64,000 nt of DNA from Saccostrea echinata. Taxonomy: Eukaryota. The translations under genes and the position numbers were made by a program. Of the stretch, positions 2,942 through 41,434 are shown one piece after another. The notes beneath the pieces are model-generated. The model was not told the DNA's origin, searched no databases, and saw nothing but the letters and a program-made list of their open reading frames with translations. The stretch lies in assembly GCF_033153115.1 (NCBI RefSeq), contig NW_026889809.1, positions 5,456,001-5,520,000 on the forward strand. The letters run 5' to 3'. The stretch's first letter is position 1, and every line of letters begins with the position of its first letter.

Positions 2942-2996
2942 TAGCTGTTTGACAAACCTGTTGTGAAAACTTTTACTCGTTATTTCAATTTCAATT

Positions 2997-13220: not shown

Positions 13221-13412
13221 NNNNNNNNNNNNNNNNNNNNNNNNNNNNNNNNNNNNNNNNNNNNNNNNNNNNNNNNNNNNNNNNNNNNNNNNNNNNNNNN
13301 NNNNNNNNNNNNNNNNNNNNNNNNNNNNNNNNNNNNNNNNNNNNNNNNNNNNNNNNNNNNNNNNNNNNNNNNNNNNNNNNNNNNNNNNNNNNNNNNNNNN
13401 NNNNNNNNNNNN
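13221..13412. other. Assembly gap (192 N)
   Basis: Run of n characters. Confidence 1.
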
Positions 13413-16490: not shown

Positions 16491-16617
16491 TATATAAAAG
16501 GCATTTCAGCAAATATACTTTAAACTTTTCATTTAGTCAGAAACCAGATAAGAATAATTCCTTACAATAGTTGCAGAAAAATATAGATCGCCAGAGTTCA
16601 CAAGTCGAGAAAAGATG
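16491..16617 (+). promoter_or_regulatory. Candidate TATA box and first exon of the chitinase gene, ending exactly on the start ATG
   Basis: TATATAAAAG at 16491-16500 and AAAGATG|GTAATA with ATG at 16615-16617. This supplies the phase-0 Met missing from the signal-peptide exon at 22344. Confidence 0.5.
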
Positions 16618-19600
16618 GTAATAATTTCTTATTTAAAGTGTCCATTAGGGCATCTAAATCATATTCATTATTTTTAATGCTTCATTCCCATCATACGTTT
16701 TAGTGAATGCTGGTACCCTACGTTTTATTCACTTTATTCAGACGTCAAATCGTCACTGGATCTTCCAAATAAATATTCTTCAAAGGAGGAGTCATAGGCT
16801 TTTCTGGACAGCTAAGTGAGTTCCAAATATCCTCGTTGGACCAAGACATGGTTCCCATCAGAAAGAACATCAGATAAGAAATTATGAAAGGTCGCTATGG
16901 AAGGCTACGAGAAAAGGAAAACGCATCCTAAATAAGCTAAGCGTGAAATCAAAAATACCCTCAACAGCGCGTATGAAACATTGATGGTGGAAATAAAGAC
17001 AATGACGATGCTGCAGCATGTGTCGTATGATTATTCTGGTACTTAATTAATCAGCAAAGACCAAAGAAAGATAAAATATACCCTGTAATTAGACACAGAA
17101 ACCCCGTAGGAAGTTTTTGCTAACTATCTTTAGGAGATCTATCAACAATCAATTTGACGAAATTTTCTGCAGAACTACACAACATGAATATGAACAAATG
17201 AAAGCATTCATCGCAAATGGCATCGTACCAGGAGGCCCTATATTGAGTTCTGAAGTCTGAGAAACCGTCTCATCGCTAAAAAAAAAAACACAGAAAACCC
17301 CAGTAGTAGACTTCATTCAAGCAGAGCATATTAAAACCGTTGGAAGCAAGCAGCACAATTATTTGCAATATATTCAATGCTGTTTTAGAGCTTAAATACG
17401 TACCGTAATAGTGTGGAGAATATCACTGTAACTATGCATAAAGGTGACAACAAACAAAAACAGCCCTCATAGTTATAGAACGATATGTGAACTGTTATGT
17501 AAAATTTTCAAGGTGTTTGAAAAAATAAATATCCACGATCGAAAACAATCATTTATTCTTTGTAATTAACATTTTCCCAATGTTCAACAGGATGGCTACC
17601 AAAAAAGTTTAAGTTGCACTACAGCATCATTTGCATTGCAAGAAAATATATACTACAATATAGAAAGCAAAAACAATGTATATACTGCTTTTTTTGGACA
17701 GTCTATTGAAAGTTTCGACTCCTTGTAGAGAAAGGGTTAGATGGTTAAGTTGTATAAATTAGGGATCAACTGTAAATTATGGTCCATCATAGAAGTTTGT
17801 CGTATAGATACACATAGTGCTATTATTAATGGATATGTGTCAAAGGTTTTGTGTAGAACAAGGAGTACAACAAGGGGGAGGGGCAGTTATCAGGTTTTTT
17901 GTATTCTGTTTTTATAAATGACCTGCTAAGCTTTGTTTGACACCTGCAGGTCTTCAGATGTTACTTAGTGTTACCTATGAATATTCTTGTAAATGGCGTT
18001 TCTCTTTTAGTGCAGAAAAATCAAATATTCTAATATTTAGATATATTGCAAAAAAATATTGCATGTTGGTGACAAAATCATACCAGAATCGAGTTAGTCT
18101 TTACCAAACACTACCCGTACCTTTGAAAAAGAAAGGAAATCCTACTTTGGAATAAATGTAAATATGCTCAAATAACCCCAGAATGTTAGTAAATATTTTA
18201 TAAGAAAATTGTCTTGCCTTCAGTATTATTCAGTTGTGAATTATGGAAAAAATTGAAAACAAAAGACTAACTGGAATATTTTGAATAGATTTCAATATTT
18301 TATTGTAAAAGACATAAAAAAAATTCCAAATATCAACTAGGTCGGCTATTTGCGAACGTATGCTCGGAATAAAACCAATACAGACTGAAATTGGCAAAAA
18401 AAAAAACTTTATTTCTTTGGAGAGTTTTGCTGCATTGATTGTGATCACCTTTCGAAACCAGTTTTTACCATACAGATGTTCAAATACTTTAACTACAACC
18501 AAACATCAAAATTCGTATTCATTATTCGGAAATACTCCTTAAGAAGATTCCTTCACACTAACATAGCTAATGCCAGTTTCCACCCAAATATATTTTGAAG
18601 AACATTGTATAACAAGTGTTTGGGTTAGGGTTAGGAGTAGGGTACAGGATAAAAACAAAAATGAACATGGATTTAAGTGAACATTTAGGTCAATGGGGAT
18701 TAAAGGATTAGGTGAAAGTAAAAGTCAGGGATAGGGGTTAGGGTTAGGAGTTGTAAAACAAGCCATTAAATTCCTACTACAATTCTTCATGGAAAGATTT
18801 AAGTCATTCTGATCCAGATTTCGATGACTTCAAGTTACTTCATACAACTGTACATAAGGTCTCACTATGGACATAATTACTCTCAACAAAAGAAATGCAA
18901 GTAGAGTACATTGCAAACATGTGGACTCTAGTATCGAAGAAAGATACGTATCAGTTCATTATACGTTCGAATCCGTTTACAAAAAGTTTTCAGCATGTCA
19001 TAGCGTCTTGTTCCGTTACTTCCAATGAAATAGGTGAATTTTTGTGTGAATTATCAATTGAATACAAAATTGTTTATATAGATTTTATCACTTTAGGCGA
19101 GAAAACTTTTTACTTATTTGTTCTCAGATTGTCCTCGATTAAGTGTTAAGCAAAGAGAAGTTCATGTTAAGTGTTTTTCATTGGTAGTTTTTAGTATAGC
19201 CACTTTCCCCGACATGATATGTTTATGATAAACACATGCTAAGATGATTGATGTTATAAAACTAAACATGACATGAAGGAGTGAACTGCTTGTATTTCTC
19301 TGCAAGTCTCATCTTCCTTTTCAATGTTTTTCTTCATATTTGGAATTGAAAACATGACATGAACATTCAAAATGTCATTAATTTACAAATCCTTCAAACT
19401 CTTGATTTAAATATTCTTGATTGATTATATAAAAGATCTCACAATTTCCCACTACTCAGTTGAACTATATAGCAGCATGTACAATAAATCTGGCTTTTAA
19501 GCAAATCTTTATTGGTAATTCTTGTTAACAAAACTCATTATTATATTAAGTTAGTAATTACATACTAAATTTATCATATAAGAACATAATGAAACAAATG

Positions 19601-22600
19601 ATATTGTAAATGCTATCTTGTGATCTACTGAACATAAGGAGCTGTAACTGGGAAGAAAGCCCAAGTATTTCTTTACGTGGTTATAAGGACCTTAAGCTTA
19701 AAAAAATTGAAATAAAAAAAAAAAGCTTCAAGATTTGAATGAACAGTTACCACTAGAATAGTAAGAACATACCCTAACAAAATACTTTAGTAAACAAAAG
19801 TTTACTATAGTTAGCTATGATATCCTTATATAGTTTTAACTGTACTAAATCAAAGTATTTTCCAACGAAATTCAAATTGTTAATTTTCATTTTCTCATTC
19901 ATATTCTTTCACGCTTACGTCTGATATTTAAAGGAAATATAAAATGTGTATTCCCATTGAGTTTCCAAAATTTACATAATTGGTATGGATTTTTTTCGAA
20001 TAAACTTTTGGGGTAAAGTTTCATAGTTAATTAATGTATTCCACCCGTAACAGCCTTGAGCTCAGATTCAATAAAATTGAATGAACAACAGATATGTAAG
20101 GATATATATGGATTGTATACTCAATATATTTAGAAATAAATTCAATATTTTACTATTAGAATGTAAGAATAGAATGTGTCCTAATGAATGACCTTAACCT
20201 GTTCTTGAAGAGTTATCTCCTTGGAGTTGAATCAAGAAGCTACTTCGCAGTAGCTAAGTACTTTGTTACTACCTTGAAAATACGGATATATATTTAATTT
20301 ATAATAAATATATTATAATATACCGTATAAAAACTAATGAAAATGAAATCAAATCCGTAAAATGTATACAAAACTTGAGTGCGTTTTTAGATGAAAACCT
20401 AAATTTCAAAGAACATGTAAACAGGAAATGTCGTACAACAATGTTAAATTATCTAAGGATTAAATGTGTTCGAAAATATTGAACAAAGGAACCTACGGAA
20501 ATTTTGGTTTTATCATTAGTTATTTAATATTTAGACCATTGCAATGTTATTTTTTTTAGTACAGCACAATGCGAAATTCAGAATATATGTGCCAAGTTTG
20601 TATTAAATAGGAGAGAATTTGACAGTTCGAAAGGAGCTCTCTTTGATCTCAACTGGCTAGTTATAAAATCTAAGATATCAGTGAAAATTCTGACATTTAT
20701 GTATAACTGTTCAGTGGGCCAAGCACGAGAATATTTAACTTAACTTTTGCCAAAACAAACTTCAAATAAAAAATTGCATAAAAGAAAAACTTTCAGTTTT
20801 AGTACCAGCGGACCAAATTTGTGGACACTTTTGCATATTAAGCAATCAAAATCTATTGATGATTTCAAAAACAACTTAAAAACTTACTTCTTTAGAGACT
20901 TTCATGCTTTATTTTAATAATGACTCTACAATGTACATTTGTATACGTATATATCATATATAAATATCTTACAGTTTTATTGCCATTGAATACGTTTATG
21001 TAAAAATAGGCATTTAAACATAAAATCAGTTTCAGTAATTTCTGTGAAAAAAAAAATAAAAAAAATAATTTCAAAATTAAGGATTTTCTCCCTCATGCAT
21101 AGCTGTGATCCTTCAACGTAATTGGCTCCAGTCTTTGGCACCCCCTTTTTTCAGCTCTTTCAAGTTTTTTTTTATTATTTGAATTTTACGGATTTTCAAC
21201 GTTTCGGCATGAGCATCACTGAAGAGACATAATTTGTCGCATCTGGTGCATCAAAATTGGTACCGTATAAGACTTACATCCATTTTAATAAATCCGGAAA
21301 TCTGGAAAAATATCATTTTCAAGCTTTATTCTAATCCTAATGATTAAAGGCATCTATCCACCATAGCATTTATTGATATTCCTAGTATTTATATTTTTAT
21401 TTTTAAAGAATTTGTTTATCCTATAGATTTCAACGTATTCTTCTTTGATTAATTACTACTTACTAAATTACTTTAAAAAAATATTTTGGTAATACTCTTC
21501 TTCCCCAAAATACTTTAAATTAATACGGCTATATTTTATATGTAACGGATTCTTAATGATAGACAATGAAGTCCTATTAGGGGAACAAATCTAAGTATTA
21601 GTAGTAGCTAACTATAATATCTATGAGATCTATCTATAATGCATCGTAGTTAAGTATAATATCTATAGTTAACTATAGTAATTCTTTGTTTGGGATCTAT
21701 ACAATCTATATTCTAAGACGAATTCACGTTGTTTTTTAATATACAATTCACTTATTTTGTCTCGATATTAAACTTAATTTATGGTAACCGGCTATAGAAA
21801 TATATGATACGTAAAAAAAGAGAGATGTGGACCTTAATGCTCACTTTAAAAAATGCATGTCTGTCTCTTTCTATCCCTTTATGTAACCTGTATTAAGGAC
21901 AACATACTGTCTATATGTTTGAAAAATTGTAGTCTTTTTTTATTTGGATGTCAGCATATTTCTGTTTAATTCTTAGATCCCTTTTCTGCTCCTTCAACCC
22001 AACCCTCAGGTTAAGGGTGAGGATCACGAGAAAGGTGGTCGTGATGACATCGATCCAATTGAAAAAAGATGTTATTTTTATTTTGTTTATTCATATGTAA
22101 ACTTTTAACTTAAACTGTGGTCCCATTTCTAAGATTATGATTTAGATAGATTAAAATCTGCCCAACGTGAAAGTAGATTTATCTTAATAAAACTTCTCTC
22201 TTGTATCAAGGAGACTGTAAAACATTTTCTTTAATTTGAGGTACACAGAAATTATCTGCAATGTTTTCTTTTCAACACACTCTAGCAAACATGTCTGGAA
22301 AAAAATACATATATGCAATTAAATTAAGATTTCTTTTCAACAGAAGAAGGTGGCGGTCTTAGGATTAATAGTCATCATATTTAGAGGTACACAATCATTT
22401 CTTTTTTCTAAAAGATTAATGTCTGAAATCACCAAGTAAGAGAGTACTACCTAATGATCCTTAAATATGAATTCCGTTCATGAGGAGGTATTTGTACATA
22501 AAAATTTTATACATTTTCAATTCAGTCGTACAACCATATAAACGAGTATGCTACTTCACCAACTGGGCACAATACAGAACTGCTCCTATGACCTTCAAAG

Positions 22601-25600
22601 CGGATGATGTGGATCCTTTCCTCTGCACTCATATCATGTACGCTTTCGGTAAAGTCGTGGGCAACACAATCGATGCTTATGAGTGGAACGACAAGGGCAC
22701 CGGTGGTAAGTAACACGTCACCTAGGCCATTGTAGGTAGAATATAGATCATTTTCGGTAACGTGTCAGGTATTCAAGCTCTCGAGGCGACAAAAAAAACA
22801 CTGATGCCTTGCTTGGATTCGTTTGTACTCACATGTTGGACTATTCTCAATGCAGGCCAATACGAGAAGATAATGAACCTGCGATCCGTGAACCCAGACC
22901 TCAAGATCCTGCTGGCCATAGGTGGATGGACTCACGGCACCGCGCCCTTCACTGCCGTGGTAGATGACCCCAATGACATGGCAGCTTTTGCAAACAACGC
23001 CTTGGCCTACTTAAAAACTTACGGATTCGACGGTCTGGATCTGGACTGGGAGTATCCGGGTGGTAATGGAAGCCCTCCAGAGGACAAACAGCGTTTCACG
23101 TCTTTTGTGCAGGTCAGTATAACAAAAACTTCCGTTCCAGGGCAGCTGTATCAAGTCCACAGATCTTGCCACAAGGCTCCCACTATGTCTGTCTTCTCTT
23201 TCAGAAACTTCGCCAAGTGTTTGACGCTGATGGTGTAGCCAACAACCGCGCGCCTCTGTTACTGACGGCAGCTGTTGCAGCTGGCAAAAGTACAATCGAC
23301 AAAGCCTATGAAATTGACCTCATCTCCAAGTAAGTTGCATTCTGGCTGTGCCGGGTGCCTGATTTGCCAAGTGCACTCATGAGTTATTTTATTTCTTCTT
23401 CTGTATTTCAGAGAGCTAGATTTCATCAACCTAATGAGCTACGATCTTCATGGAAGCTGGGAAGCAACCACCGGACATCACAGTGCGCTATTTGGCCGTG
23501 CCGGTGAAGTTGGAACTGCTGCATATATGAATGTGGTAGGTTTGTCAGTTCGGGTATGATTTCCTCGCTAATAGATCTTTTGAATGTACTTGCCTCGCAT
23601 CTTTCATTCATTATTTGCGCAGGATTACGCGGTGAACTACTGGATTAATCTCGGTGCACCTCCAGAAAAACTGGTTTTGGGAATGGGTTTGTATGGCAGA
23701 TCCTTCACCCTCTCTAGTTCAAGTAATACAGGAGTAGGAGCGCCCGCCGTAGGAGCAGGAGCGGCTGGAACGTATACTGGAGAAGCAGGGTTGTTGGCCT
23801 ATTACGAGGCATGTAACGTTTTCCAGTCATTTCAATTAAGAAGTCACTTTTGCTGATCTAACAATTTGAACTCGAATGATTATAGCATTCGAAAAAAAAA
23901 AGAAGAGTACTCATCATTTTTACTAAGATCGGATCAAATGTTGCAGGTGTGTTATAATTTGAAATACAATGGTTGGACAAGACAGTGGCACGGTGAGCAC
24001 AAGGTACCGTATGCGTATCACGGTACCCAGTGGATTGGATATGACGACACAGAGAGTTTCCAAGTAAAGGTAAGCTTAAAGGGGAGAAGTGTCTAGGCCT
24101 AAGCTCCGATACAGTTACACAGCTTGCAATCCCACTGATGAATCTGGTCTGTCTAGACTATAATTTTCACTCGTTCTCTCGTTGAAAGGTTGACTACATC
24201 AAGTCCAAAGGACTGGGTGGCGGTATGGTTTGGTCTCTTGATCAAGACGATTTCAGCAACAGCTGTGGCGATGGGGCGTATCCTCTGATGAACTTATTGC
24301 GAAGTGAGCTGTCTGGATCACCTGTAGCTTCCACTCCTTTGCCACCATCATTGCATTCCTCCTCTCAAACTGTGCCATCCTCCTCCACTAGATTACCTAC
24401 CACCATTCCCAGCACTGCAGTGTCGGGATACAAACGAGTATGTTACTTCACCAACTGGGCACAATACAGAACTGCTCCTATGACCTTCAAAGCGGATGAT
24501 GTGGATCCTTTCCTCTGCACTCATATCATGTACGCTTTCGGTAAAGTCGTGGGCAACACAATCGATGCTTATGAGTGGAACGACAAGGGCACCGGTGGTA
24601 AGTAACACGTCACCTAGGCCATTGTAGGTAGAATATAGATCATTTTTGGTAACGTGTCAGGTATTCAAGCTCTCGAGGCGACAAAAAAAACACTGGTGCC
24701 TTGCTTGGATTCGTTTGTACTCACATGTTGGACTATTCTCAATGCAGGCCAATACGAGAAGATAATGAACCTGCGATCCGTGAACCCAGACCTCAAGATC
24801 CTGCTGGCCATAGGTGGATGGACTCACGGCACCGCGCCCTTCACTGCCGTGGTAGATGACCCCAATGACATGGCAGCTTTTGCAAACAACGCCTTGGCCT
24901 ACTTAAAAACTTACGGATTCGACGGTCTGGATCTGGACTGGGAGTATCCGGGTGGTAATGGAAGCCCTCCAGAGGACAAACAGCGTTTCACGTCTTTTGT
25001 GCAGGTCAGTATAACAAAAACTTCCGTTCCAGGGCAGCTGTATCAAGTCCACAGATCTTGCCACAAGGCTCCCACTATGTCTGTCTTCTCTTTCAGAAAC
25101 TTCGCCAAGTGTTTGACGCTGATGGTGTAGCCAACAACCGCGCGCCTCTGTTACTGACGGCAGCTGTTGCAGCTGGCAAAAGTACAATCGACAAAGCCTA
25201 TGAAATTGACCTCATCTCCAAGTAAGTTGCATTCTGGCTGTGCCGGGTGCCTGATTTGCCAAGTGCACTCATGAGTTATTTTATTTCTTCTTCTGTATTT
25301 CAGAGAGCTAGATTTCATCAACCTAATGAGCTACGATCTTCATGGAAGCTGGGAAGCAACCACCGGACATCACAGTGCGCTATTTGGCCGTGCCGGTGAA
25401 GTTGGAACTGCTGCATATATGAATGTGGTAGGTTTGTCAGTTCGGGTATGATTTCCTCGCTAATAGATCTTTTGAATGTACTTGCCTTGCATCTTTCATT
25501 CATTATTTGCGCAGGATTACGCGGTGAACTACTGGATTAATCTCGGTGCACCTCCAGAAAAACTGGTTTTGGGAATGGGTTTGTATGGCAGATCCTTCAC

Positions 25601-28600
25601 CCTCTCTAGTTCCAGTAATACAGGAGTAGGAGCGCCCGCCGTAGGAGCAGGAGCGGCTGGAACGTATACTGGAGAAGCAGGGTTGTTGGCCTATTACGAG
25701 GCATGTAACGTTTTCCAGTCATTTCAATTAAGAAGTCACTTTTGCTGATCTAACAATTTGAACTCGAATGATTATAGCATTCGAAAAAAAAAAGAAGAGT
25801 ACTCATCATTTTTACTAAGATCGGATCAAATGTTGCAGGTGTGTTATAATTTGAAATACAATGGTTGGACAAGACAGTGGCACGGTGAGCACAAGGTACC
25901 GTATGCGTATCACGGTACCCAGTGGATTGGATATGACGACACAGAGAGTTTCCAAGTAAAGGTAAGCTTAAAGGGGAGAAGTGTCTAGGCCTAAGCTCCG
26001 ATACAGTTACACAGCTTGCAATCCCACTGATGAATCTGGTCTGTCTAGACTATAATTTTCACTCGTCCTCTCGTTGATAGGTTGACTACATCAAGTCCAA
26101 AGGACTGGGTGGCGGTATGGTTTGGTCTCTTGATCAAGACGATTTCAGCAACAGCTGTGGCGATGGGGCGTATCCTCTGATGAACTTATTGCGAAGTGAG
26201 CTGTCTGGATCACCTGTAGCTTCCACTCCTTTGCCACCATCATTGCATTCCTCCTCTCAAACTGTGCCATCCTCCTCCACTAGATTACCTACCACCATTC
26301 CCAGCACTGCAGTGTCGGGATACAAACGAGTATGTTACTTCACCAACTGGGCACAATACAGAACTGCTCCTATGACCTTCAAAGCGGATGATGTGGATCC
26401 TTTCCTCTGCACTCATATCATGTACGCTTTCGGTAAAGTCGTGGGCAACACAATCGATGCTTATGAGTGGAACGACAAGGGCACCGGTGGTAAGTAACAC
26501 GTCACCTAGGCCATTGTAGGTAGAATATAGATCATTTTCGGTAACGTGTCAGGTATTCAAGCTCTCGAGGCGACAAAAAAAACACTGGTGCCTTGCTTGG
26601 ATTCGTTTGTACTCACATGTTGGACTATTCTCAATGCAGGCCAATACGAGAAGATAATGAACCTGCGATCCGTGAACCCAGACCTCAAGATCCTGCTGGC
26701 CATAGGTGGATGGACTCACGGCACCGCGCCCTTCACTGCCGTGGTAGATGACCCCAATGACATGGCAGCTTTTGCAAACAACGCCTTGGCCTACTTAAAA
26801 ACTTACGGATTCGACGGTCTGGATCTGGACTGGGAGTATCCGGGTGGTAATGGAAGCCCTCCAGAGGACAAACAGCGTTTCACGTCTTTTGTGCAGGTCA
26901 GTATAACAAAAACTTCCGTTCCAGGGCAGCTGTATCAAGTCCACAGATCTTGCCACAAGGCTCCCACTATGTCTGTCTTCTCTTTCAGAAACTTCGCCAA
27001 GTGTTTGACGCTGATGGTGTAGCCAACAACCGCGCGCCTCTGTTACTGACGGCAGCTGTTGCAGCTGGCAAAAGTACAATCGACAAAGCCTATGAAATTG
27101 ACCTCATCTCCAAGTAAGTTGCATTCTGGCTGTGCCGGGTGCCTGATTTGCCAAGTGCACTCATGAGTTATTTTATTTCTTCTTCTGTATTTCAGAGAGC
27201 TAGATTTCATCAACCTAATGAGCTACGATCTTCATGGAAGCTGGGAAGCAACCACCGGACATCACAGTGCGCTATTTGGCCGTGCCGGTGAAGTTGGAAC
27301 TGCTGCATATATGAATGTGGTAGGTTTGTCAGTTCGGGTATGATTTCCTCGCTAATAGATCTTTTGAATGTACTTGCCTCGCATCTTTCATTCATTATTT
27401 GCGCAGGATTACGCGGTGAACTACTGGATTAATCTCGGTGCACCTCCAGAAAAACTGGTTTTGGGAATGGGTTTGTATGGCAGATCCTTCACCCTCTCTA
27501 GTTCCAGTAATACAGGAGTAGGAGCGCCCGCCGTAGGAGCAGGAGCGGCTGGAACGTATACTGGAGAAGCAGGGTTGTTGGCCTATTACGAGGCATGTAA
27601 CGTTTTCCAGTCATTTCAATTAAGAAGTCACTTTTGCTGATCTAACAATTTGAACTCGAATGATTATAGCATTCGAAAAAAAAAAGAAGAGTACTCATCA
27701 TTTTTACTAAGATCGGATCAAATGTTGCAGGTGTGTTATAATTTGAAATACAATGGTTGGACAAGACAGTGGCACGGTGAGCACAAGGTACCGTATGCGT
27801 ATCACGGTACCCAGTGGATTGGATATGACGACACAGAGAGTTTCCAAGTAAAGGTAAGCTTAAAGGGGAGAAGTGTCTAGGCCTAAGCTCCGATACAGTT
27901 ACACAGCTTGCAATCCCACTGATGAATCTGGTCTGTCTAGACTATAATTTTCACTCGTCCTCTCGTTGATAGGTTGACTACATCAAGTCCAAAGGACTGG
28001 GTGGCGGTATGGTTTGGTCTCTTGATCAAGACGATTTCAGCAACAGCTGTGGCGATGGGGCGTATCCTCTGATGAACTTATTGCGAAGTGAGCTGTCTGG
28101 ATCACCTGTAGCTTCCACTCCTTTGCCACCATCATTGCATTCCTCCTCTCAAACTGTGCCATCCTCCTCCACTAGATTACCTACCACCATTCCCAGCACT
28201 GCAGTGTCGGGATACAAACGAGTATGTTACTTCACCAACTGGGCACAATACAGAACTGCTCCTATGACCTTCAAAGCGGATGATGTGGATCCTTTCCTCT
28301 GCACTCATATCATGTACGCTTTCGGTAAAGTCGTGGGCAACACAATCGATGCTTATGAGTGGAACGACAAGGGCACCGGTGGTAAGTAACACGTCACCTA
28401 GGCCATTGTAGGTAGAATATAGATCATTTTCGGTAACGTGTCAGGTATTCAAGCTCTCGAGGCGACAAAAAAAACACTGGTGCCTTGCTTGGATTCGTTT
28501 GTACTCACATGTTGGACTATTCTCAATGCAGGCCAATACGAGAAGATAATGAACCTGCGATCCGTGAACCCAGACCTCAAGATCCTGCTGGCCATAGGTG

Positions 28601-31600: not shown

Positions 31601-34600
31601 GATTGGATATGACGACACAGAGAGTTTCCAAGTAAAGGTAAGCTTAAAGGGGAGAAGTGTCTAGGCCTAAGCTCCGATACAGTTACACAGCTTGCAATCC
31701 CACTGATGAATCTGGTCTGTCTAGACTATAATTTTCACTCGTCCTCTCGTTGATAGGTTGACTACATCAAGTCCAAAGGACTGGGTGGCGGTATGGTTTG
31801 GTCTCTTGATCAAGACGATTTCAGCAACAGCTGTGGCGATGGGGCGTATCCTCTGATGAACTTATTGCGAAGTGAGCTGTCTGGATCACCTGTAGCTTCC
31901 ACTCCTTTGCCACCATCATTGCATTCCTCCTCTCAAACTGTGCCATCCTCCTCCACTAGATTACCTACCACCATTCCCAGCACTGCAGTGTCGGGATACA
32001 AACGAGTATGTTACTTCACCAACTGGGCACAATACAGAACTGCTCCTATGACCTTCAAAGCGGATGATGTGGATCCTTTCCTCTGCACTCATATCATGTA
32101 CGCTTTCGGTAAAGTCGTGGGCAACACAATCGATGCTTATGAGTGGAACGACAAGGGCACCGGTGGTAAGTAACACGTCACCTAGGCCATTGTAGGTAGA
32201 ATATAGATCATTTTCGGTAACGTGTCAGGTATTCAAGCTCTCGAGGCGACAAAAAAAACACTGGTGCCTTGCTTGGATTCGTTTGTACTCACATGTTGGA
32301 CTATTCTCAATGCAGGCCAATACGAGAAGATAATGAACCTGCGATCCGTGAACCCAGACCTCAAGATCCTGCTGGCCATAGGTGGATGGACTCACGGCAC
32401 CGCGCCCTTCACTGCCGTGGTAGATGACCCCAATGACATGGCAGCTTTTGCAAACAACGCCTTGGCCTACTTAAAAACTTACGGATTCGACGGTCTGGAT
32501 CTGGACTGGGAGTATCCGGGTGGTAATGGAAGCCCTCCAGAGGACAAACAGCGTTTCACGTCTTTTGTGCAGGTCAGTATAACAAAAACTTCCGTTCCAG
32601 GGCAGCTGTATCAAGTCCACAGATCTTGCCACAAGGCTCCCACTATGTCTGTCTTCTCTTTCAGAAACTTCGCCAAGTGTTTGACGCTGATGGTGTAGCC
32701 AACAACCGCGCGCCTCTGTTACTGACGGCAGCTGTTGCAGCTGGCAAAAGTACAATCGACAAAGCCTATGAAATTGACCTCATCTCCAAGTAAGTTGCAT
32801 TCTGGCTGTGCCGGGTGCCTGATTTGCCAAGTGCACTCATGAGTTATTTTATTTCTTCTTCTGTATTTCAGAGAGCTAGATTTCATCAACCTAATGAGCT
32901 ACGATCTTCATGGAAGCTGGGAAGCAACCACCGGACATCACAGTGCGCTATTTGGCCGTGCCGGTGAAGTTGGAACTGCTGCATATATGAATGTGGTAGG
33001 TTTGTCAGTTCGGGTATGATTTCCTCGCTAATAGATCTTTTGAATGTACTTGCCTCGCATCTTTCATTCATTATTTGCGCAGGATTACGCGGTGAACTAC
33101 TGGATTAATCTCGGTGCACCTCCAGAAAAACTGGTTTTGGGAATGGGTTTGTATGGCAGATCCTTCACCCTCTCTAGTTCCAGTAATACAGGAGTAGGAG
33201 CGCCCGCCGTAGGAGCAGGAGCGGCTGGAACGTATACTGGAGAAGCAGGGTTGTTGGCCTATTACGAGGCATGTAACGTTTTCCAGTCATTTCAATTAAG
33301 AAGTCACTTTTGCTGATCTAACAATTTGAACTCGAATGATTATAGCATTCGAAAAAAAAAAGAAGAGTACTCATCATTTTTACTAAGATCGGATCAAATG
33401 TTGCAGGTGTGTTATAATTTGAAATACAATGGTTGGACAAGACAGTGGCACGGTGAGCACAAGGTACCGTATGCGTATCACGGTACCCAGTGGATTGGAT
33501 ATGACGACACAGAGAGTTTCCAAGTAAAGGTAAGCTTAAAGGGGAGAAGTGTCTAGGCCTAAGCTCCGATACAGTTACACAGCTTGCAATCCCACTGATG
33601 AATCTGGTCTGTCTAGACTATAATTTTCACTCGTCCTCTCGTTGATAGGTTGACTACATCAAGTCCAAAGGACTGGGTGGCGGTATGGTTTGGTCTCTTG
33701 ATCAAGACGATTTCAGCAACAGCTGTGGCGATGGGGCGTATCCTCTGATGAACTTATTGCGAAGTGAGCTGTCTGGATCACCTGTAGCTTCCACTCCTTT
33801 GCCACCATCATTGCATTCCTCCTCTCAAACTGTGCCATCCTCCTCCACTAGATTACCTACCACCATTCCCAGCACTGCAGTGTCGGGATACAAACGAGTA
33901 TGTTACTTCACCAACTGGGCACAATACAGAACTGCTCCTATGACCTTCAAAGCGGATGATGTGGATCCTTTCCTCTGCACTCATATCATGTACGCTTTCG
34001 GTAAAGTCGTGGGCAACACAATCGATGCTTATGAGTGGAACGACAAGGGCACCGGTGGTAAGTAACACGTCACCTAGGCCATTGTAGGTAGAATATAGAT
34101 CATTTTCGGTAACGTGTCAGGTATTCAAGCTCTCGAGGCGACAAAAAAAACACTGGTGCCTTGCTTGGATTCGTTTGTACTCACATGTTGGACTATTCTC
34201 AATGCAGGCCAATACGAGAAGATAATGAACCTGCGATCCGTGAACCCAGACCTCAAGATCCTGCTGGCCATAGGTGGATGGACTCACGGCACCGCGCCCT
34301 TCACTGCCGTGGTAGATGACCCCAATGACATGGCAGCTTTTGCAAACAACGCCTTGGCCTACTTAAAAACTTACGGATTCGACGGTCTGGATCTGGACTG
34401 GGAGTATCCGGGTGGTAATGGAAGCCCTCCAGAGGACAAACAGCGTTTCACGTCTTTTGTGCAGGTCAGTATAACAAAAACTTCCGTTCCAGGGCAGCTG
34501 TATCAAGTCCACAGATCTTGCCACAAGGCTCCCACTATGTCTGTCTTCTCTTTCAGAAACTTCGCCAAGTGTTTGACGCTGATGGTGTAGCCAACAACCG

Positions 34601-37600
34601 CGCGCCTCTGTTACTGACGGCAGCTGTTGCAGCTGGCAAAAGTACAATCGACAAAGCCTATGAAATTGACCTCATCTCCAAGTAAGTTGCATTCTGGCTG
34701 TGCCGGGTGCCTGATTTGCCAAGTGCACTCATGAGTTATTTTATTTCTTCTTCTGTATTTCAGAGAGCTAGATTTCATCAACCTAATGAGCTACGATCTT
34801 CATGGAAGCTGGGAAGCAACCACCGGACATCACAGTGCGCTATTTGGCCGTGCCGGTGAAGTTGGAACTGCTGCATATATGAATGTGGTAGGTTTGTCAG
34901 TTCGGGTATGATTTCCTCGCTAATAGATCTTTTGAATGTACTTGCCTCGCATCTTTCATTCATTATTTGCGCAGGATTACGCGGTGAACTACTGGATTAA
35001 TCTCGGTGCACCTCCAGAAAAACTGGTTTTGGGAATGGGTTTGTATGGCAGATCCTTCACCCTCTCTAGTTCCAGTAATACAGGAGTAGGAGCGCCCGCC
35101 GTAGGAGCAGGAGCGGCTGGAACGTATACTGGAGAAGCAGGGTTGTTGGCCTATTACGAGGCATGTAACGTTTTCCAGTCATTTCAATTAAGAAGTCACT
35201 TTTGCTGATCTAACAATTTGAACTCGAATGATTATAGCATTCGAAAAAAAAAAGAAGAGTACTCATCATTTTTACTAAGATCGGATCAAATGTTGCAGGT
35301 GTGTTATAATTTGAAATACAATGGTTGGACAAGACAGTGGCACGGTGAGCACAAGGTACCGTATGCGTATCACGGTACCCAGTGGATTGGATATGACGAC
35401 ACAGAGAGTTTCCAAGTAAAGGTAAGCTTAAAGGGGAGAAGTGTCTAGGCCTAAGCTCCGATACAGTTACACAGCTTGCAATCCCACTGATGAATCTGGT
35501 CTGTCTAGACTATAATTTTCACTCGTCCTCTCGTTGATAGGTTGACTACATCAAGTCCAAAGGACTGGGTGGCGGTATGGTTTGGTCTCTTGATCAAGAC
35601 GATTTCAGCAACAGCTGTGGCGATGGGGCGTATCCTCTGATGAACTTATTGCGAAGTGAGCTGTCTGGATCACCTGTAGCTTCCACTCCTTTGCCACCAT
35701 CATTGCATTCCTCCTCTCAAACTGTGCCATCCTCCTCCACTAGATTACCTACCACCATTCCCAGCACTGCAGTGTCGGGATACAAACGAGTATGTTACTT
35801 CACCAACTGGGCACAATACAGAACTGCTCCTATGACCTTCAAAGCGGATGATGTGGATCCTTTCCTCTGCACTCATATCATGTACGCTTTCGGTAAAGTC
35901 GTGGGCAACACAATCGATGCTTATGAGTGGAACGACAAGGGCACCGGTGGTAAGTAACACGTCACCTAGGCCATTGTAGGTAGAATATAGATCATTTTCG
36001 GTAACGTGTCAGGTATTCAAGCTCTCGAGGCGACAAAAAAAACACTGGTGCCTTGCTTGGATTCGTTTGTACTCACATGTTGGACTATTCTCAATGCAGG
36101 CCAATACGAGAAGATAATGAACCTGCGATCCGTGAACCCAGACCTCAAGATCCTGCTGGCCATAGGTGGATGGACTCACGGCACCGCGCCCTTCACTGCC
36201 GTGGTAGATGACCCCAATGACATGGCAGCTTTTGCAAACAACGCCTTGGCCTACTTAAAAACTTACGGATTCGACGGTCTGGATCTGGACTGGGAGTATC
36301 CGGGTGGTAATGGAAGCCCTCCAGAGGACAAACAGCGTTTCACGTCTTTTGTGCAGGTCAGTATAACAAAAACTTCCGTTCCAGGGCAGCTGTATCAATT
36401 CCACAGATCTTGCCACAAGGCTCCCACTATGTCTGTCTTCTCTTTCAGAAACTTCGCCAAGTGTTTGACGCTGATGGTGTAGCCAACAACCGCGCGCCTC
36501 TGTTACTGACGGCAGCTGTTGCAGCTGGCAAAAGTACAATCGACAAAGCCTATGAAATTGACCTCATCTCCAAGTAAGTTGCATTCTGGCTGTGCCGGGT
36601 GCCTGATTTGCCAAGTGCACTCATGAGTTATTTTATTTCTTCTTCTGTATTTCAGAGAGCTAGATTTCATCAACCTAATGAGCTACGATCTTCATGGAAG
36701 CTGGGAAGCAACCACCGGACATCACAGTGCGCTATTTGGCCGTGCCGGTGAAGTTGGAACTGCTGCATATATGAATGTGGTAGGTTTGTCAGTTCGGGTA
36801 TGATTTCCTCGCTAATAGATCTTTTGAATGTACTTGCCTCGCATCTTTCATTCATTATTTGCGCAGGATTACGCGGTGAACTACTGGATTAATCTCGGTG
36901 CACCTCCAGAAAAACTGGTTTTGGGAATGGGTTTGTATGGCAGATCCTTCACCCTCTCTAGTTCCAGTAATACAGGAGTAGGAGCGCCCGCCGTAGGAGC
37001 AGGAGCGGCTGGAACGTATACTGGAGAAGCAGGGTTGTTGGCCTATTACGAGGCATGTAACGTTTTCCAGTCATTTCAATTAAGAAGTCACTTTTGCTGA
37101 TCTAACAATTTGAACTCGAATGATTATAGCATTCGAAAAAAAAAAAGAAGAGTACTCATCATTTTTACTAAGATCGGATCAAATGTTGCAGGTGTGTTAT
37201 AATTTGAAATACAATGGTTGGACAAGACAGTGGCACGGTGAGCACAAGGTACCGTATGCGTATCACGGTACCCAGTGGATTGGATATGACGACACAGAGA
37301 GTTTCCAAGTAAAGGTAAGCTTAAAGGGGAGAAGTGTCTAGGCCTAAGCTCCGATACAGTTACACAGCTTGCAATCCCACTGATGAATCTGGTCTGTCTA
37401 GACTATAATTTTCACTCGTCCTCTCGTTGATAGGTTGACTACATCAAGTCCAAAGGACTGGGTGGCGGTATGGTTTGGTCTCTTGATCAAGACGATTTCA
37501 GCAACAGCTGTGGCGATGGGGCGTATCCTCTGATGAACTTATTGCGAAGTGAGCTGTCTGGATCACCTGTAGCTTCCACTCCTTTGCCACCATCATTGCA

Positions 37601-40600
37601 TTCCTCCTCTCAAACTGTGCCATCCTCCTCCACTAGATTACCTACCACCATTCCCAGCACTGCAGTGTCGGGATACAAACGAGTATGTTACTTCACCAAC
37701 TGGGCACAATACAGAACTGCTCCTATGACCTTCAAAGCGGATGATGTGGATCCTTTCCTCTGCACTCATATCATGTACGCTTTCGGTAAAGTCGTGGGCA
37801 ACACAATCGATGCTTATGAGTGGAACGACAAGGGCACCGGTGGTAAGTAACACGTCACCTAGGCCATTGTAGGTAGAATATAGATCATTTTCGGTAACGT
37901 GTCAGGTATTCAAGCTCTCGAGGCGACAAAAAAAACACTGGTGCCTTGCTTGGATTCGTTTGTACTCACATGTTGGACTATTCTCAATGCAGGCCAATAC
38001 GAGAAGATAATGAACCTGCGATCCGTGAACCCAGACCTCAAGATCCTGCTGGCCATAGGTGGATGGACTCACGGCACCGCGCCCTTCACTGCCGTGGTAG
38101 ATGACCCCAATGACATGGCAGCTTTTGCAAACAACGCCTTGGCCTACTTAAAAACTTACGGATTCGACGGTCTGGATCTGGACTGGGAGTATCCGGGTGG
38201 TAATGGAAGCCCTCCAGAGGACAAACAGCGTTTCACGTCTTTTGTGCAGGTCAGTATAACAAAAACTTCCGTTCCAGGGCAGCTGTATCAAGTCCACAGA
38301 TCTTGCCACAAGGCTCCCACTATGTCTGTCTTCTCTTTCAGAAACTTCGCCAAGTGTTTGACGCTGATGGTGTAGCCAACAACCGCGCGCCTCTGTTACT
38401 GACGGCAGCTGTTGCAGCTGGCAAAAGTACAATCGACAAAGCCTATGAAATTGACCTCATCTCCAAGTAAGTTGCATTCTGGCTGTGCCGGGTGCCTGAT
38501 TTGCCAAGTGCACTCATGAGTTATTTTATTTCTTCTTCTGTATTTCAGAGAGCTAGATTTCATCAACCTAATGAGCTACGATCTTCATGGAAGCTGGGAA
38601 GCAACCACCGGACATCACAGTGCGCTATTTGGCCGTGCCGGTGAAGTTGGAACTGCTGCATATATGAATGTGGTAGGTTTGTCAGTTCGGGTATGATTTC
38701 CTCGCTAATAGATCTTTTGAATGTACTTGCCTCGCATCTTTCATTCAATATTTGCGCAGGATTACGCGGTGAACTACTGGATTAATCTCGGTGCACCTCC
38801 AGAAAAACTGGTTTTGGGAATGGGTTTGTATGGCAGATCCTTCACCCTCTCTAGTTCCAGTAATACAGGAGTAGGAGCGCCCGCCGTAGGAGCAGGAGCG
38901 GCTGGAACGTATACTGGAGAAGCAGGGTTGTTGGCCTATTACGAGGCATGTAACGTTTTCCAGTCATTTCAATTAAGAAGTCACTTTTGCTGATCTAACA
39001 ATTTGAACTCGAATGATTATAGCATTCGAAAAAAAAAAGAAGAGTACTCATCATTTTTACTAAGATCGGATCAAATGTTGCAGGTGTGTTATAATTTGAA
39101 ATACAATGGTTGGACAAGACAGTGGCACGGTGAGCACAAGGTACCGTATGCGTATCACGGTACCCAGTGGATTGGATATGACGACACAGAGAGTTTCCAA
39201 GTAAAGGTAAGCTTAAAGGGGAGAAGTGTCTAGGCCTAAGCTCCGATACAGTTACACAGCTTGCAATCCCACTGATGAATCTGGTCTGTCTAGACTATAA
39301 TTTTCACTCGTCCTCTCGTTGATAGGTTGACTACATCAAGTCCAAAGGACTGGGTGGCGGTATGGTTTGGTCTCTTGATCAAGACGATTTCAGCAACAGC
39401 TGTGGCGATGGGGCGTATCCTCTGATGAACTTATTGCGAAGTGAGCTGTCTGGATCATCTGTAGTATCTTCAATGATACCTTCAACAAACTCTTCGTCTA
39501 AAGTCTTTACTTCATCTCTTCCTCCACAAGATTCAACCGTTGGAACAACTGGATCTTCTAGTTCAAACTATTATGTATCCACAGATATCCAAGTAAACAG
39601 TGAGGGGACAACGCAGTCCCACACAGTTTCAACAGAGATTGTTTATACAACGAAATCGGCTATCTGTGGAGGTAATCGTTATGACTTCTGCTCTTATAAG
39701 ATATAAAAAAAATTCAGAAAAGCATACTGTGTAGATAATATTCAAAGAAATTTTTACAGCACCAAAGTCATGTGTAGATGGTCAATTTTATGAGGACAGC
39801 TGTGACATTCGCAAGTACTACCAGTGTTCGTCTGGTGTTGCATGGCACTACGAGTGTGCTACTGGAACAGTGTGGGATAAACGAATCCAAAATTGTAACT
39901 GGGATTACCTCGTCCTTACTTCGTCTGCACCCTGTGGCTGTGGTCGTAAGTTCAATCATGATGCATATTTTTACTCGTTTATCCAACATGTTTCGAATTT
40001 TCTCGACGAAAAAGTATATGTCAATGGTATATATTTAACAGTTTGTCTTCTAAATTTCAGCTCCATCAGATTGTATTCATGGAAAGTTTTATGAAGACAA
40101 ATGCGATATGAAACTTTACTACCAATGTGCACATGGTATTCCTTATCCATATGAATGCCATCCTGGAACTCTTTGGGATGTAACAATTACTAATTGTAAT
40201 TGGGAGTATGCAGTAGCCAGCAGAACACTCCCGACTGGATCAGATTGCAGCAGTTATGGTACAACTCATTTACCTGGTCAGCAGACTACTGTTCCATCTA
40301 CACAGACCCAAAAGCAAATTTCTGAAAAGACTTCCCAGCACACAGAACATTCAACTTCTGATTCCACGAATAGAGATTTCTCAACTGTGAAAGTCTCCAC
40401 TTCCTCAAGCACACACACACCGTCTGCTGATCAAACTATAGCCAAAACTCAATCAACCGAAATACCTCCTGCCTCTCAGTCATACACATCCGTAACACTT
40501 GTGTCAACAAGCCAGGTTACTACACTCCAGTCAAGCATATTCACTAAGCAACCCATTGTTTCTTCGACCTTTTTATCTACATCTTCCCCAAAAAGTGAAA

Positions 40601-41434
40601 CTCAAACTAAGGAACAATCCAGGACTTCGTCTCTCTTTACTACAACAGATGGTCCTGTATCACTATCCCGGCAACAAACAACATCATTCCGTACTGTCCC
40701 CACTGATCAGACACAAACCCGTCAACAAGCTACAACGCCTTCCTATATTGCCACTACAGGCCGCACATCATCAAAAATTCAGCACCAAACAACTACGGAT
40801 CTCACTTCGTTACAAACTCACCAAAATACAGCAACTTTGTCATCTGTTACCACAACAGATGGCACACGAACAAGCCATCAGCAGACATCAATGTTGCCCA
40901 ATGTTGCTTCTACAAATGGCTCAGTATCTCAAGTAGAAAAACAGATAACATCATCCCCTGTTGCAACAACAAATGGCGCACTTTCTCAAGTTCAACAACA
41001 GACAACAACATCGCACCATACTGTCACCACGAATGACTCAATATCACAGGCTCAACAACAGTCTACCGCACAAACCCAAACGACAACCGCTTGTGGACGT
41101 GAGTTATACTCTAGGAAATATTACCCGTTTTTATTTTCGACCAAACATATTTGAAACGCTCAGTCCTTTAAAAAAATGAATTTTTCACAATAAATTAATG
41201 CAACTTTTTAAAATAAAGTGAGTATTATTAAATTTAACAACCAAAGAAGGGTTGTTGAATTTTCAACGCATCCAGTATACTTTTTAATGTACATTTACTC
41301 ATTATTACCCTTTATTTTCAGCTCCTGACACTTGTCCATTTCCGGCTTGGGATTCTGGAAGCACAACTATGACGTCACACTATCTTCTAATTCCTTTAGG
41401 AGTTCTATTAGCATTTATTTTCTCATATTTATAG
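16615..41434 (+). CDS. Giant multi-domain GH18 chitinase: signal peptide + 9 x GH18 catalytic domains + 2 x CBM14 + Ser/Thr stalk + GPI-type C-terminus (~4171 aa, ~60 coding exons)
   Basis: Exons: 16615-16617 (ATG, least certain), 22344-22386, 22526-22705. Per unit (unit 1 coordinates, add 1892 each, +1 from within unit 8): 22856-23112, 23205-23329, 23412-23535, 23623-23808, 23947-24069, 24189-24597. Terminal exons: 39326-39671, 39760-39945, 40061-41098, 41322-41434. All phases match. Motifs per unit: [30 protein letters not shown] (intact DxDxE), [46 protein letters not shown]-terminus [19 protein letters not shown]. Confidence 0.88.
16700..19200 (+). mobile_element. Decayed non-LTR retrotransposon (LINE) ORF2 remnant in the presumed first intron of the chitinase
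   Basis: From ~17585: [36 protein letters not shown](fs)LD, later [21 protein letters not shown] (RT motifs). Many stops and frameshifts. Boundaries are approximate. Confidence 0.75.
20360..21030 (+). mobile_element. 5'-truncated L2/CR1-type LINE 3' fragment
   Basis: [56 protein letters not shown]... to [12 protein letters not shown], typical post-RT C-terminal region. Confidence 0.7.
21080..21280 (+). mobile_element. Penelope-type terminal-repeat fragment with a degenerate hammerhead-like core
   Basis: CTCCCTCATGCATAGCT...GAGCATCACTGAAGAGACATAATTTGTCGCATCTGGTGCATCAAAATTGGTACCGTATAA. CTGAAGA and the GACA/TGTC stem are present, GAAA is absent. The family is recognised from memory. Confidence 0.45.
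22537..39464 (+). repeat. Intragenic tandem array: 9 units of 1892 bp (exons and introns), >99% identical
   Basis: Domain starts at 22537, 24429, 26321, 28213, 30105, 31997, 33889, 35781 and 37674. The ORF track repeats with the same period. I found only a handful of intronic or synonymous differences by eye. Confidence 0.98.
39760..40250 (+). other. Two CBM14 (peritrophin-A type) chitin-binding domains of the chitinase
   Basis: [45 protein letters not shown] and [45 protein letters not shown]. Cys spacing and aromatic residues fit CBM14. Confidence 0.85.

What the first reader, a model, noticed from the sequence alone, without database searches (positions are those of the whole stretch)
16615..41434. 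Single ~4170-aa chitinase with nine identical, catalytically intact GH18 domains in series
Seen in sequence: the nine units are not nine genes. There is no stop, promoter or signal exon between them. A 409-nt exon (24189-24597 and its copies) carries the end of one domain, a ~39-aa S/T/P linker and the start of the next in one frame. Unit coding length is 1224 nt (408 aa) and every unit keeps DxDxE ([11 protein letters not shown]). One signal peptide sits at the front, with 2 CBM14 and a stalk at the back. Established knowledge: arthropod group II chitinases (Cht10) have about 4-5 GH18 domains that are mutually divergent, some inactive, and interspersed with CBM14. Inference: a beads-on-a-string homopolymeric chitinase like this is a different and, to my knowledge, undescribed architecture. 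It could give multivalent attack on chitin (shell organic matrix or gut peritrophic matrix) or serve as a polyprotein for enzyme dosage.
Basis: partly seen in the sequence, partly recalled or inferred. Interest (0 to 1): 0.92.

Follow-up and report, generated by a model that had tools for sequence, protein, structure and literature searches.

The report
Nine-domain chitinase gene array in oyster
A rock-oyster gene strings nine identical, apparently active chitin-cutting enzyme domains into one reading frame on a mucin-like, probably membrane-anchored stalk; the other chromosome copy has seven, scallop genome annotations hold smaller versions, and no RNA data could be reached to confirm one long transcript.

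Summary
Window 22526-39206 carries nine tandem 1892-bp units. Each unit has six exons (1224 nt, 408 aa) and encodes one GH18 domain plus an S/T/P linker. A 409-nt exon joins each domain to the next in frame. My 60-exon model gives 4171 aa with no internal stop, and all nine domains are identical in protein sequence with all four GH18 motifs.

- **Genome and annotation:** the genome is Saccostrea echinata. Its RefSeq annotation splits this locus into at least eight short models. They lack signal peptides and mostly end in one retained intron, which has a GC donor.
- **Second haplotype:** a colinear locus on another contig (flanks 99.2-99.4% identical) has seven intact units. The scan had already noted that copy (s1-805404). 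Four intronic sites differ between the haplotypes in every unit, which indicates concerted evolution and makes an assembly artefact unlikely.
- **Novelty:** the architecture is not unique. A scallop RefSeq protein has five identical GH18 domains at the same 408-aa period. Pecten, an ark shell and a pike have similar arrays. Nine is the most I found, and I found no paper describing such arrays.

The parts
16615..16617 (+). Hypothetical first coding exon: ATG followed by GTAATA; a TATA-like box lies at 16491
   Evidence: Orthologues begin M-K-[KR]-hydrophobic. The signal exon has no in-frame ATG, so the Met must come from an upstream exon in phase 0. This is one of 14 ATG|GT sites in 13.5-22.3 kb. 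It is conserved on the other haplotype. RefSeq instead uses an exon at 17003-17038. Unresolved.
22344..22386 (+). Signal-peptide exon ([14 protein letters not shown], ends in phase 1)
   Evidence: AG acceptor and GT donor. The N-terminus matches Crassostrea orthologues in length and pattern. It is 100% identical on haplotype C34.
22526..22705 (+). Exon A0: end of the leader plus the start of GH18 domain 1 ([14 protein letters not shown]...)
   Evidence: Homology to the internal linker exon starts at about 22536.
22526..39206 (+). Array of nine GH18 units of 1892 bp, six exons each, 54 exons in all
   Evidence: Exon coordinates of every unit are listed.
24189..24597 (+). Reference copy of the 409-nt linker exon A: C-terminal end of one GH18 domain, ~39-aa S/T/P linker, and start of the next domain. 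Copies start at 26081, 27973, 29865, 31757, 33649, 35541 and 37434
   Evidence: Single open frame with AG acceptor and GTAAGT donor. Pfam matches both ends. It is a chimera: the 5' ~139 nt equal exon A', and the 3' ~170 nt equal exon A0. RefSeq models read through it.
25701..25838 (+). E-F intron (reference copy) with a GC-AG boundary. An alternative weak GT donor at 25710 adds 3 aa in frame. An A10 run lies at 25784
   Evidence: The junction AYYE|VCYN matches human CHIT1 without an insertion and the O. edulis and C34 RefSeq models. Most RefSeq models of this locus end in this retained intron.
39326..39671 (+). Exon A': end of GH18 domain 9 plus the start of the S/T-rich tail
   Evidence: The part of this exon that RefSeq XP_061166051.1 covers, and its 3' junction, agree with that model.
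39760..39945 (+). CBM14 (peritrophin-A) domain 1, a phase 1-1 exon
   Evidence: PF01607 E=1.3e-9. Splice sites. The junctions agree with the RefSeq tail model and with O. edulis XP_056017877.1.
40061..41098 (+). CBM14 domain 2 followed by a mucin-like S/T-rich stalk
   Evidence: PF01607 E=1.1e-6. The last 346 aa before the final exon, which take in CBM14-2 and the stalk, are 43% S+T+P. Splice sites.
41322..41434 (+). Last exon: [14 protein letters not shown], a short spacer and a 16-aa hydrophobic C-terminus (GPI-type or tail-anchor signal); stop at 41432-41434
   Evidence: The motif and hydrophobic end are conserved in Crassostrea and Ostrea; scallops keep the hydrophobic end, preceded by a different short motif.
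41921..41926 (+). First AATAAA after the stop codon; none occurs inside a repeat unit

Best explanation
This is one gene of the rock oyster Saccostrea echinata. It encodes a giant secreted chitinase of about 4171 aa. The order of parts is a signal peptide, nine identical CHIT1/AMCase-like GH18 catalytic domains joined by ~39-aa S/T/P linkers that are probably O-glycosylated and disordered, two CBM14 chitin-binding domains, a mucin-like stalk, and a C-terminal hydrophobic signal of GPI-anchor type. The array arose by tandem duplication of a six-exon cassette whose breakpoints lay inside two coding exons. This created a chimeric in-frame linker exon. Unequal crossing-over and gene conversion keep the array homogeneous and make copy number polymorphic (9 and 7 units on the two haplotypes of the sequenced animal). 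Shown here: the anatomy, the frame, the intact motifs, the fold, the second haplotype, the pattern of variation and the orthologues. Inferred: transcription as one ~13-kb mRNA, use of the GC donor, the position of the ATG exon, anchoring, enzymatic activity, and the tissue. By analogy with other bivalve chitinases the tissue would be digestive epithelium or mantle.
For: Nine units at 99-100% identity. All splice sites and phases are conserved, and the CDS of 12516 nt has no stop. Pfam coverage is contiguous across exons. The unit is 53% identical to human CHIT1; an AlphaFold model matches it at TM 0.96-0.97 and rmsd 1.3-1.5 A, and the linker has pLDDT about 30. A colinear second locus on contig C34 has 7 units with every exon intact and flanks 99.2-99.4% identical. 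All 7 C34 units are distinguishable, and 6 unit types occur among the 9 window units. Four intronic sites are fixed between the haplotypes in all units. There are 5 exonic versus 13 intronic variable sites, Fisher p=0.0019, and no indel lies in an exon of any of the 16 units. No poly(A) hexamer lies inside the unit. The N-terminus and tail match single-domain Crassostrea orthologues, and the tail also matches an O. edulis model. A scallop RefSeq model chains 5 identical units. RefSeq models of this genome read through the linker exon.
Against: RefSeq annotates the locus as at least eight separate short models, most ending in the retained E-F intron. That intron needs a non-canonical GC donor, or a weak GT donor 9 nt downstream. 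The start codon exon is not located, and RefSeq's first exon (17003-17038) gives an N-terminus without a signal peptide. In the window haplotype three units are identical and two others are identical, so 9 could be off by a few.
Confidence: 0.65

Rival explanations
1. The locus is a cluster of separately expressed short chitinase genes or truncated transcripts, as RefSeq annotates it. Each would start at an internal Met and end in the retained E-F intron.
For: RefSeq models XP_061166042-049 of 318-781 aa cover the array. Four identical 370-aa models end with a stop in the E-F intron. The GC donor may be used inefficiently.
Against: These models have no signal peptide. They start inside the last strands of the previous domain and lack the last ~85 aa of the TIM barrel, so they would not fold as GH18. 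There is no poly(A) hexamer in the unit, and the spaces between units are introns of 119-150 bp with no room for promoters. One RefSeq model spans two units, and the C34 model uses the GC junction. The A10 run in that intron could cause oligo-dT internal priming.
Confidence: 0.1
2. This is a polyprotein. The long precursor is made, then cut in the linkers (for example after the KR that precedes each VCYF) into ~45-kDa monomers, so the array serves enzyme dosage.
For: Every domain is preceded by YKR. S/T/P linkers are exposed and disordered.
Against: YKR also precedes the single domain of Crassostrea and Mytilus orthologues, directly after the signal peptide, so it belongs to the domain's N-terminus and is not array-specific. 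There is no furin-type RxxR. Only the last unit would keep the CBM14 domains and the anchor.
Confidence: 0.12
3. The array is real, but the count of nine is an assembly error (expansion or collapse within identical units).
For: Units W2=W5 and W3=W6=W7 are identical. The a-b-c-a-b-c pattern is a 5.7-kb higher-order repeat that an assembler could loop.
Against: Six distinct unit types in the window and seven distinct units on C34 set floors of 6 and 7. Fixed between-haplotype differences in all units show two independently assembled arrays.
Confidence: 0.13

Closest known systems
Predicted scallop protein XP_060083629.1 (Ylistrum balloti LOC132562873, 3487 aa); also Pecten maximus XP_033737784.1
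   Same: Identical GH18 domains in series at the same 408-aa period (402 aa in Pecten). Each has an intact [10 protein letters not shown] motif and starts with [14 protein letters not shown]. They are joined by S/T-rich linkers and followed by Cys-rich CBM-like modules, an S/T stalk and a hydrophobic C-terminus. They fall in the same pteriomorph clade in the domain tree.
   Different: Five (or three) domains are modelled rather than nine. They are about 50% identical to the oyster unit. They are automatic predictions named 'uncharacterized', and the 5' end of the Ylistrum model looks spurious. Domains cluster by species, so the arrays were homogenised or expanded separately.
Crassostrea/Magallana orthologues (XP_052688145.1 'mucin-4-like', XP_065923772.1, C. 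virginica XP_022318366.1)
   Same: Same signal peptide pattern, same GH18 subfamily (about 70% identity to the Ostrea homologue), S/T stalk, the CGPP[12 protein letters not shown] motif and a hydrophobic end.
   Different: Only one GH18 domain is annotated.
Arthropod group II chitinase (Cht10 / ChtII)
   Same: A large secreted protein with several GH18 domains and CBM14 modules joined by flexible linkers (PMC5827449).
   Different: ChtII has 4-5 mutually divergent GH18 domains (35-73% identity in Tribolium), some inactive, and 4-7 CBM14 interspersed among them. It has no mucin stalk or hydrophobic tail. [quoted passage not shown] Tribolium domains fall outside the bivalve clade.
Ca-Chit of Crassostrea angulata (KJ438173; PMC4457423)
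   Same: A cloned full-length oyster cDNA with two GH18 domains, a Thr-rich region and a C-terminal membrane anchor. It is expressed in digestive tissue and regulated by feeding.
   Different: The authors place it in the 'chitinase 3' family. The S. echinata and M. gigas two- and five-domain proteins of that clade are a separate branch from this gene, and their domains are divergent (71-97%). I did not have the Ca-Chit sequence to test this directly.
Human LPA kringle IV-2 VNTR (from general knowledge)
   Same: A multi-exon coding cassette repeated in frame, with near-identical copies including introns and allelic copy-number variation that changes protein size.
   Different: The repeated module there is a binding kringle, not an enzyme domain. 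This is a resemblance of genomic mechanism only.

Membership tests
GH18 active chitinase (chitotriosidase/AMCase-like) | Match to Pfam PF00704 over the whole domain | tested here: met
   Exons cover profile positions 2-317 contiguously. Exon C alone is not significant.
GH18 active chitinase (chitotriosidase/AMCase-like) | Catalytic DxxDxDxE motif and the other three conserved motifs (KxxxxxGGW, MxYDxxG, GxxxWxxDxDD; PMC5827449) | tested here: met
   [24 protein letters not shown] and [12 protein letters not shown] each occur nine times. They align to the same motifs of human CHIT1.
GH18 active chitinase (chitotriosidase/AMCase-like) | (beta/alpha)8 barrel with an alpha+beta insertion, superposable on solved chitinases | tested here: met
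   AlphaFold model: mean pLDDT 81.8, mostly above 90 within the domain. Foldseek against CHIT1: TMt 0.96-0.97, rmsd 1.3-1.5 A, 53% identity.
GH18 active chitinase (chitotriosidase/AMCase-like) | Hydrolysis of chitin | not testable with these tools
   Needs an enzyme assay.
Arthropod group II chitinase (Cht10/ChtII) | 4-5 mutually divergent GH18 domains, some lacking the catalytic Glu | tested here: not met
   There are nine identical domains, all with the motif. Tribolium Cht10 domains are 35-73% identical to each other.
Arthropod group II chitinase (Cht10/ChtII) | CBM14 modules interspersed among the catalytic domains | tested here: not met
   Only two CBM14 domains, both after the last GH18. 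The linkers have no Cys.
Arthropod group II chitinase (Cht10/ChtII) | Domains group with Cht10 domains in a tree | tested here: not met
   In the quick ML tree the oyster unit lies in a pteriomorph bivalve clade (SH-aLRT 98), apart from Tribolium Cht10. The careful tree search did not finish.
Pteriomorph mucin-stalk chitinase (unnamed orthologue group) | Signal peptide followed directly by [14 protein letters not shown]; C-terminal CBM14 pair, S/T stalk, Cys-Gly-Pro-Pro...DSGS motif and hydrophobic end | tested here: met
   Compared with Crassostrea, Ostrea and scallop proteins. The oyster clade has support 100.
GPI-anchored protein | C-terminal signal: small omega residues, 7-10-aa spacer, hydrophobic stretch ending the protein | tested here: inconclusive
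   DSGS, then TTMTSHY, then a 16-aa hydrophobic end with no charged tail. No GPI predictor or experiment was available. The Ca-Chit authors read the analogous end as a transmembrane anchor.
In-frame multi-exon cassette VNTR (LPA KIV-2 type) | Near-identical cassettes including introns, coding length a multiple of 3, allelic copy-number difference | tested here: met
   1892-bp units with at most 8 differences, 1224 nt coding. There are 9 versus 7 units on colinear loci with flanks 99.2-99.4% identical. That the two loci are alleles is inferred from colinearity.

The most novel reading that the evidence does not exclude
A 'catalytic-domain VNTR': an active enzyme domain encoded by a six-exon cassette behaves like a minisatellite. 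Concerted evolution is fast enough that every unit carries haplotype-private substitutions, and allelic copy number (7 versus 9 in one animal) sets the valency or dose of a surface-tethered chitinase. The same process runs independently in oysters, scallops and ark shells. In this genome's and O. edulis's RefSeq annotation such genes are chopped into fragments, and several of the scallop models also start mid-domain or with a spurious 5' end, so their size and prevalence would be underestimated.
Probability: 0.5. Interest if true: 0.75.

Novelty: new variant of a known kind. Interest (0 to 1): 0.6.

Why it matters
Multi-GH18 chitinases are known, but insect ChtII, with 4-5 divergent and partly dead domains, was described as the maximum (PMC5827449). 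A protein with nine identical, apparently active domains on a mucin stalk would be the most multivalent chitinase proposed so far. It offers a natural series for asking whether valency helps on crystalline chitin: 1 domain in Crassostrea, 3-5 in scallops, 7 and 9 in this oyster. The two haplotypes give a clean small example of concerted evolution and copy-number polymorphism in an enzyme-coding cassette. There is also a practical point. RefSeq fragments the gene in this genome and in O. edulis, so gene-family counts of 'expanded GH18 genes in tandem arrays' in molluscs (PMC7560691) may partly count domains of single genes.

Tried and rejected
- **Own-genome search:** searching with a whole unit failed ('too many letters'). 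A 151-nt linker query worked.
- **Joined model:** Exons were searched one by one by reference, and RefSeq protein ids that cover the unit were used instead. The joined translation was computed only inside a script, to check the frame.
- **Rejected reading, Cht10:** an arthropod-type Cht10 orthologue is ruled out by architecture and tree.
- **Rejected reading, KR site:** KR as an evolved processing site is unlikely, because it is present in single-domain orthologues.
- **Rejected reading, Ca-Chit:** Ca-Chit as the direct orthologue is unlikely, because it appears to belong to the chitinase-3 clade.
- **Literature:** searches for identical or tandem GH18 domains in bivalves found no description.
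- **Neighbouring ORFs:** Pfam on neighbouring ORFs and on first-intron ORFs gave nothing.
Full report
**Observation**

The window holds a tandem array with a start-to-start spacing of 1892 bp (once 1893 bp). There are nine copies at 99-100% identity, and units differ from a reference unit by 0-8 bases. GC content rises to 0.47 in the array against about 0.30-0.34 around it.

Reading one unit base by base gives six exons:

| Exon | Coordinates | Length (nt) |
|---|---|---|
| A | 24189-24597 | 409 |
| B | 24748-25004 | 257 |
| C | 25097-25221 | 125 |
| D | 25304-25427 | 124 |
| E | 25515-25700 | 186 |
| F | 25839-25961 | 123 |

The total is 1224 nt, or 408 aa. The introns are 82-150 bp.

The same acceptors and donors stand in all units. 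Searched exon by exon by reference, the pieces cover Pfam PF00704 in order. The downstream part of exon A covers profile positions 2-48, B covers 51-131, D covers 173-205, E covers 206-256, F covers 258-297, and the upstream part of exon A covers 298-317. Exon C alone is too short to score.

**Whole model**

- The signal exon is 22344-22386 and the first domain exon is 22526-22705.
- The array follows.
- Then come exon A' (39326-39671), CBM14-1 (39760-39945), CBM14-2 plus the S/T-rich stalk (40061-41098) and the last exon (41322-41434).
- With a one-codon ATG exon in front, the 60 exons give 12516 nt and 4171 aa with no internal stop.
- The four GH18 motifs each occur nine times, and the nine domains are identical in protein.
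- The joined translation was made only inside a script as a frame check.

- *GC donor.* The E-F intron of every unit begins with GC, not GT. The junction AYYE|VCYN that the GC donor gives matches human CHIT1 without a gap. It also matches the O. edulis model and one RefSeq model of this genome. A weak GT donor 9 nt downstream also keeps the frame, and another RefSeq model uses it.
- *Start codon.* The ATG at 16615 is only one of 14 ATG|GT sites upstream. It has a TATA-like box at 16491 and an A at -3, and it is conserved on the other haplotype. Orthologue N-termini of the form M-K-[KR][23 protein letters not shown] strongly support the signal exon. They also require a Met directly before it. 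Where that Met lies is not settled.

**Identity of the genome and its annotation**

Protein searches returned RefSeq proteins of Saccostrea echinata. Their source contigs are 5,712,361 and 7,031,926 bases long. The second length equals that of contig C34 of the window's own assembly, and the first fits the window's own contig C60, whose length I was not given.

RefSeq cuts this locus into many models:

- a 318-aa model with an N-terminus from an exon at 17003-17038 and no signal peptide;
- a 781-aa model spanning two units;
- a 426-aa model;
- four identical 370-aa models that start at a Met inside exon A and stop in the retained E-F intron;
- a 511-aa tail model, which agrees with my tail splicing over the part it covers.

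All of these read exon A straight through the linker. The short models lack a signal peptide and the last ~85 aa of the barrel. I therefore read them as fragments, broken mostly at the GC-AG intron among multi-mapping repeats. This is an inference.

**Second haplotype**

A 151-nt linker probe found eight copies in the window and six on contig C34. The C34 region is colinear with the window on both sides at 99.2-99.4% identity, apart from indels. It holds seven units with every exon intact. The scan had noted this copy before (s1-805404).

Aligning all 16 units shows the following:

- Five exonic variable sites (three nonsynonymous, two synonymous) stand against 13 intronic ones, although exons make up 65% of the unit (Fisher p=0.0019). 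No indel lies in an exon of any unit.
- Four intronic sites differ between the haplotypes in every unit: 25087, 25765, 25794 and a deletion at 24683. Units are therefore homogenised within a chromosome faster than the haplotypes coalesce.
- Unit types follow the order a-b-c-a-b-c-c-d-e in the window, which is six types. All seven C34 units are distinct.

This rules out the reading that only 1-2 units exist. It sets floors of six and seven units. The exact nine remains open to a small error.

Array introns have GC 0.41, against 0.25-0.30 in the other introns of the gene. This fits biased gene conversion.

**Origin**

Exon A is a chimera. Its first ~139 nt equal exon A' and its last ~170 nt equal exon A0, with ~100 nt of linker between them. 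A tandem duplication with breakpoints inside these two exons would create exactly this in-frame exon.

**What the protein is**

- One unit aligns end to end with human chitotriosidase (E=3.5e-131).
- An AlphaFold model of one unit plus its linker has pLDDT mostly above 90 in the domain and about 30 in the linker.
- The model superposes on CHIT1 at TM 0.96-0.97, rmsd 1.3-1.5 A and 53% identity.
- The tail has two CBM14 domains, a stalk, and the ending DSGS, spacer, 16 hydrophobic residues. This ending is conserved in Crassostrea and Ostrea; scallops keep the hydrophobic end after a different short motif. It is consistent with a GPI signal but untested.

**Relatives**

| Species / protein | GH18 domains | Identity between domains |
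|---|---|---|
| Crassostrea and Magallana orthologues | 1 | - |
| O. edulis and S. cucullata models | at least 2 units joined by the same kind of linker | - |
| Ylistrum balloti (scallop) | 5, period 408 aa | 96-100% |
| Pecten maximus | 3 | 99-100% |
| Mizuhopecten | 2 | 99% |
| Tegillarca | 3 | 92-96% |
| M. gigas 'chitinase 3' protein | 5 | 71-97% |
| Esox lucius (pike) | 6 | 82-99% |

- The Ylistrum protein also has the same tail design as the oyster gene.
- The Esox domains carry DLAWE in place of DLDWE and are followed by a huge T-rich mucin region.
- Among proteins of 3265-10390 aa that share words with a GH18 domain, only Esox, Artemia and two hymenopteran proteins appeared, and no mollusc.
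- In a quick ML tree the array domains cluster by species within a pteriomorph clade, apart from Tribolium Cht10. The careful tree search did not finish.

**Literature**

- Insect ChtII, with 4-5 catalytic domains and 4-7 CBM14, is called the chitinase with the greatest number of domains. Its two active domains were additive, not synergistic (PMC5827449).
- Molluscan GH18 genes are reported as expanded and lying in tandem gene arrays (PMC7560691).
- Ca-Chit of C. angulata is a cloned cDNA with two GH18 domains, a Thr-rich region and an anchor. It is expressed in digestive tissue (PMC4457423) and seems to belong to the chitinase-3 clade.
- I found no paper describing arrays of identical GH18 domains.

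**Verdict**

The one-gene reading is the best explanation at about 0.65. It rests on sequence logic, two haplotypes and orthologues, not on RNA. The architecture is a more extreme member of a design that already exists, unnamed, in bivalve annotations, so it is a new variant of a known kind. The most interesting solid results are the haplotype-private homogenisation and the 9-versus-7 copy-number difference.

Noticed in passing
window 7939-9093 (+): A 384-codon open frame made of Gly-rich GGFP/GGSG repeats (also seen by TRF at 8094-8942). Local GC is 0.43. There is no Pfam match. It could be an exon of a glycine-rich structural or shell-matrix-like protein.
   Followed up: partly
window 13221-13412: A run of 192 N (assembly gap or masked stretch), left untouched. 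Haplotype C34 is colinear on both sides of it.
   Followed up: no
window 44897-46294, 55836-56278, 57158-58393 and 60346-63399: Satellite-like tandem arrays with periods of about 167-168 bp and 433 bp lie downstream of the gene.
   Followed up: no
window 24598-26080 (introns of a unit) versus 39672-41321: Array introns have GC 0.41, while the other introns of the same gene have 0.25-0.30. This fits GC-biased gene conversion in the array.
   Followed up: yes
window 22856-39464; G000:C34:4349868-4362424: Higher-order patterns of unit variants. The window haplotype shows a three-unit pattern (units 1=4, 2=5, 3=6=7). Haplotype C34 shows an alternating two-unit pattern (units 1, 3, (5) versus 2, 4).
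   Followed up: yes
G000:C34:4347128-4348847 versus window ~21835: A 1.7-kb insertion/deletion difference between the two haplotypes lies in the long first intron, just upstream of the signal exon. A second gap in colinearity lies at window 571-2942.
   Followed up: no
window 25784 (and copies): An A10 run sits in the E-F intron of every unit, and its length varies between units. It could prime oligo-dT on unspliced RNA and mimic 3' ends where most RefSeq models stop.
   Followed up: no
protein P0001 (Esox lucius XP_034146378.1, 5937 aa): A pike protein with CBM14-like modules, six GH18 domains 82-99% identical at a ~488-aa period, the third Asp of the motif replaced (DLAWE), and then ~2800 aa of T-rich mucin repeats. 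It is annotated as uncharacterized and has many isoforms.
   Followed up: partly
proteins P0308, P0009 (Ostrea edulis) and P0411 (Saccostrea cucullata): RefSeq models of the orthologous arrays in these oysters are also truncated. They start at internal Mets or end in retained introns, which suggests the same annotation problem there.
   Followed up: partly
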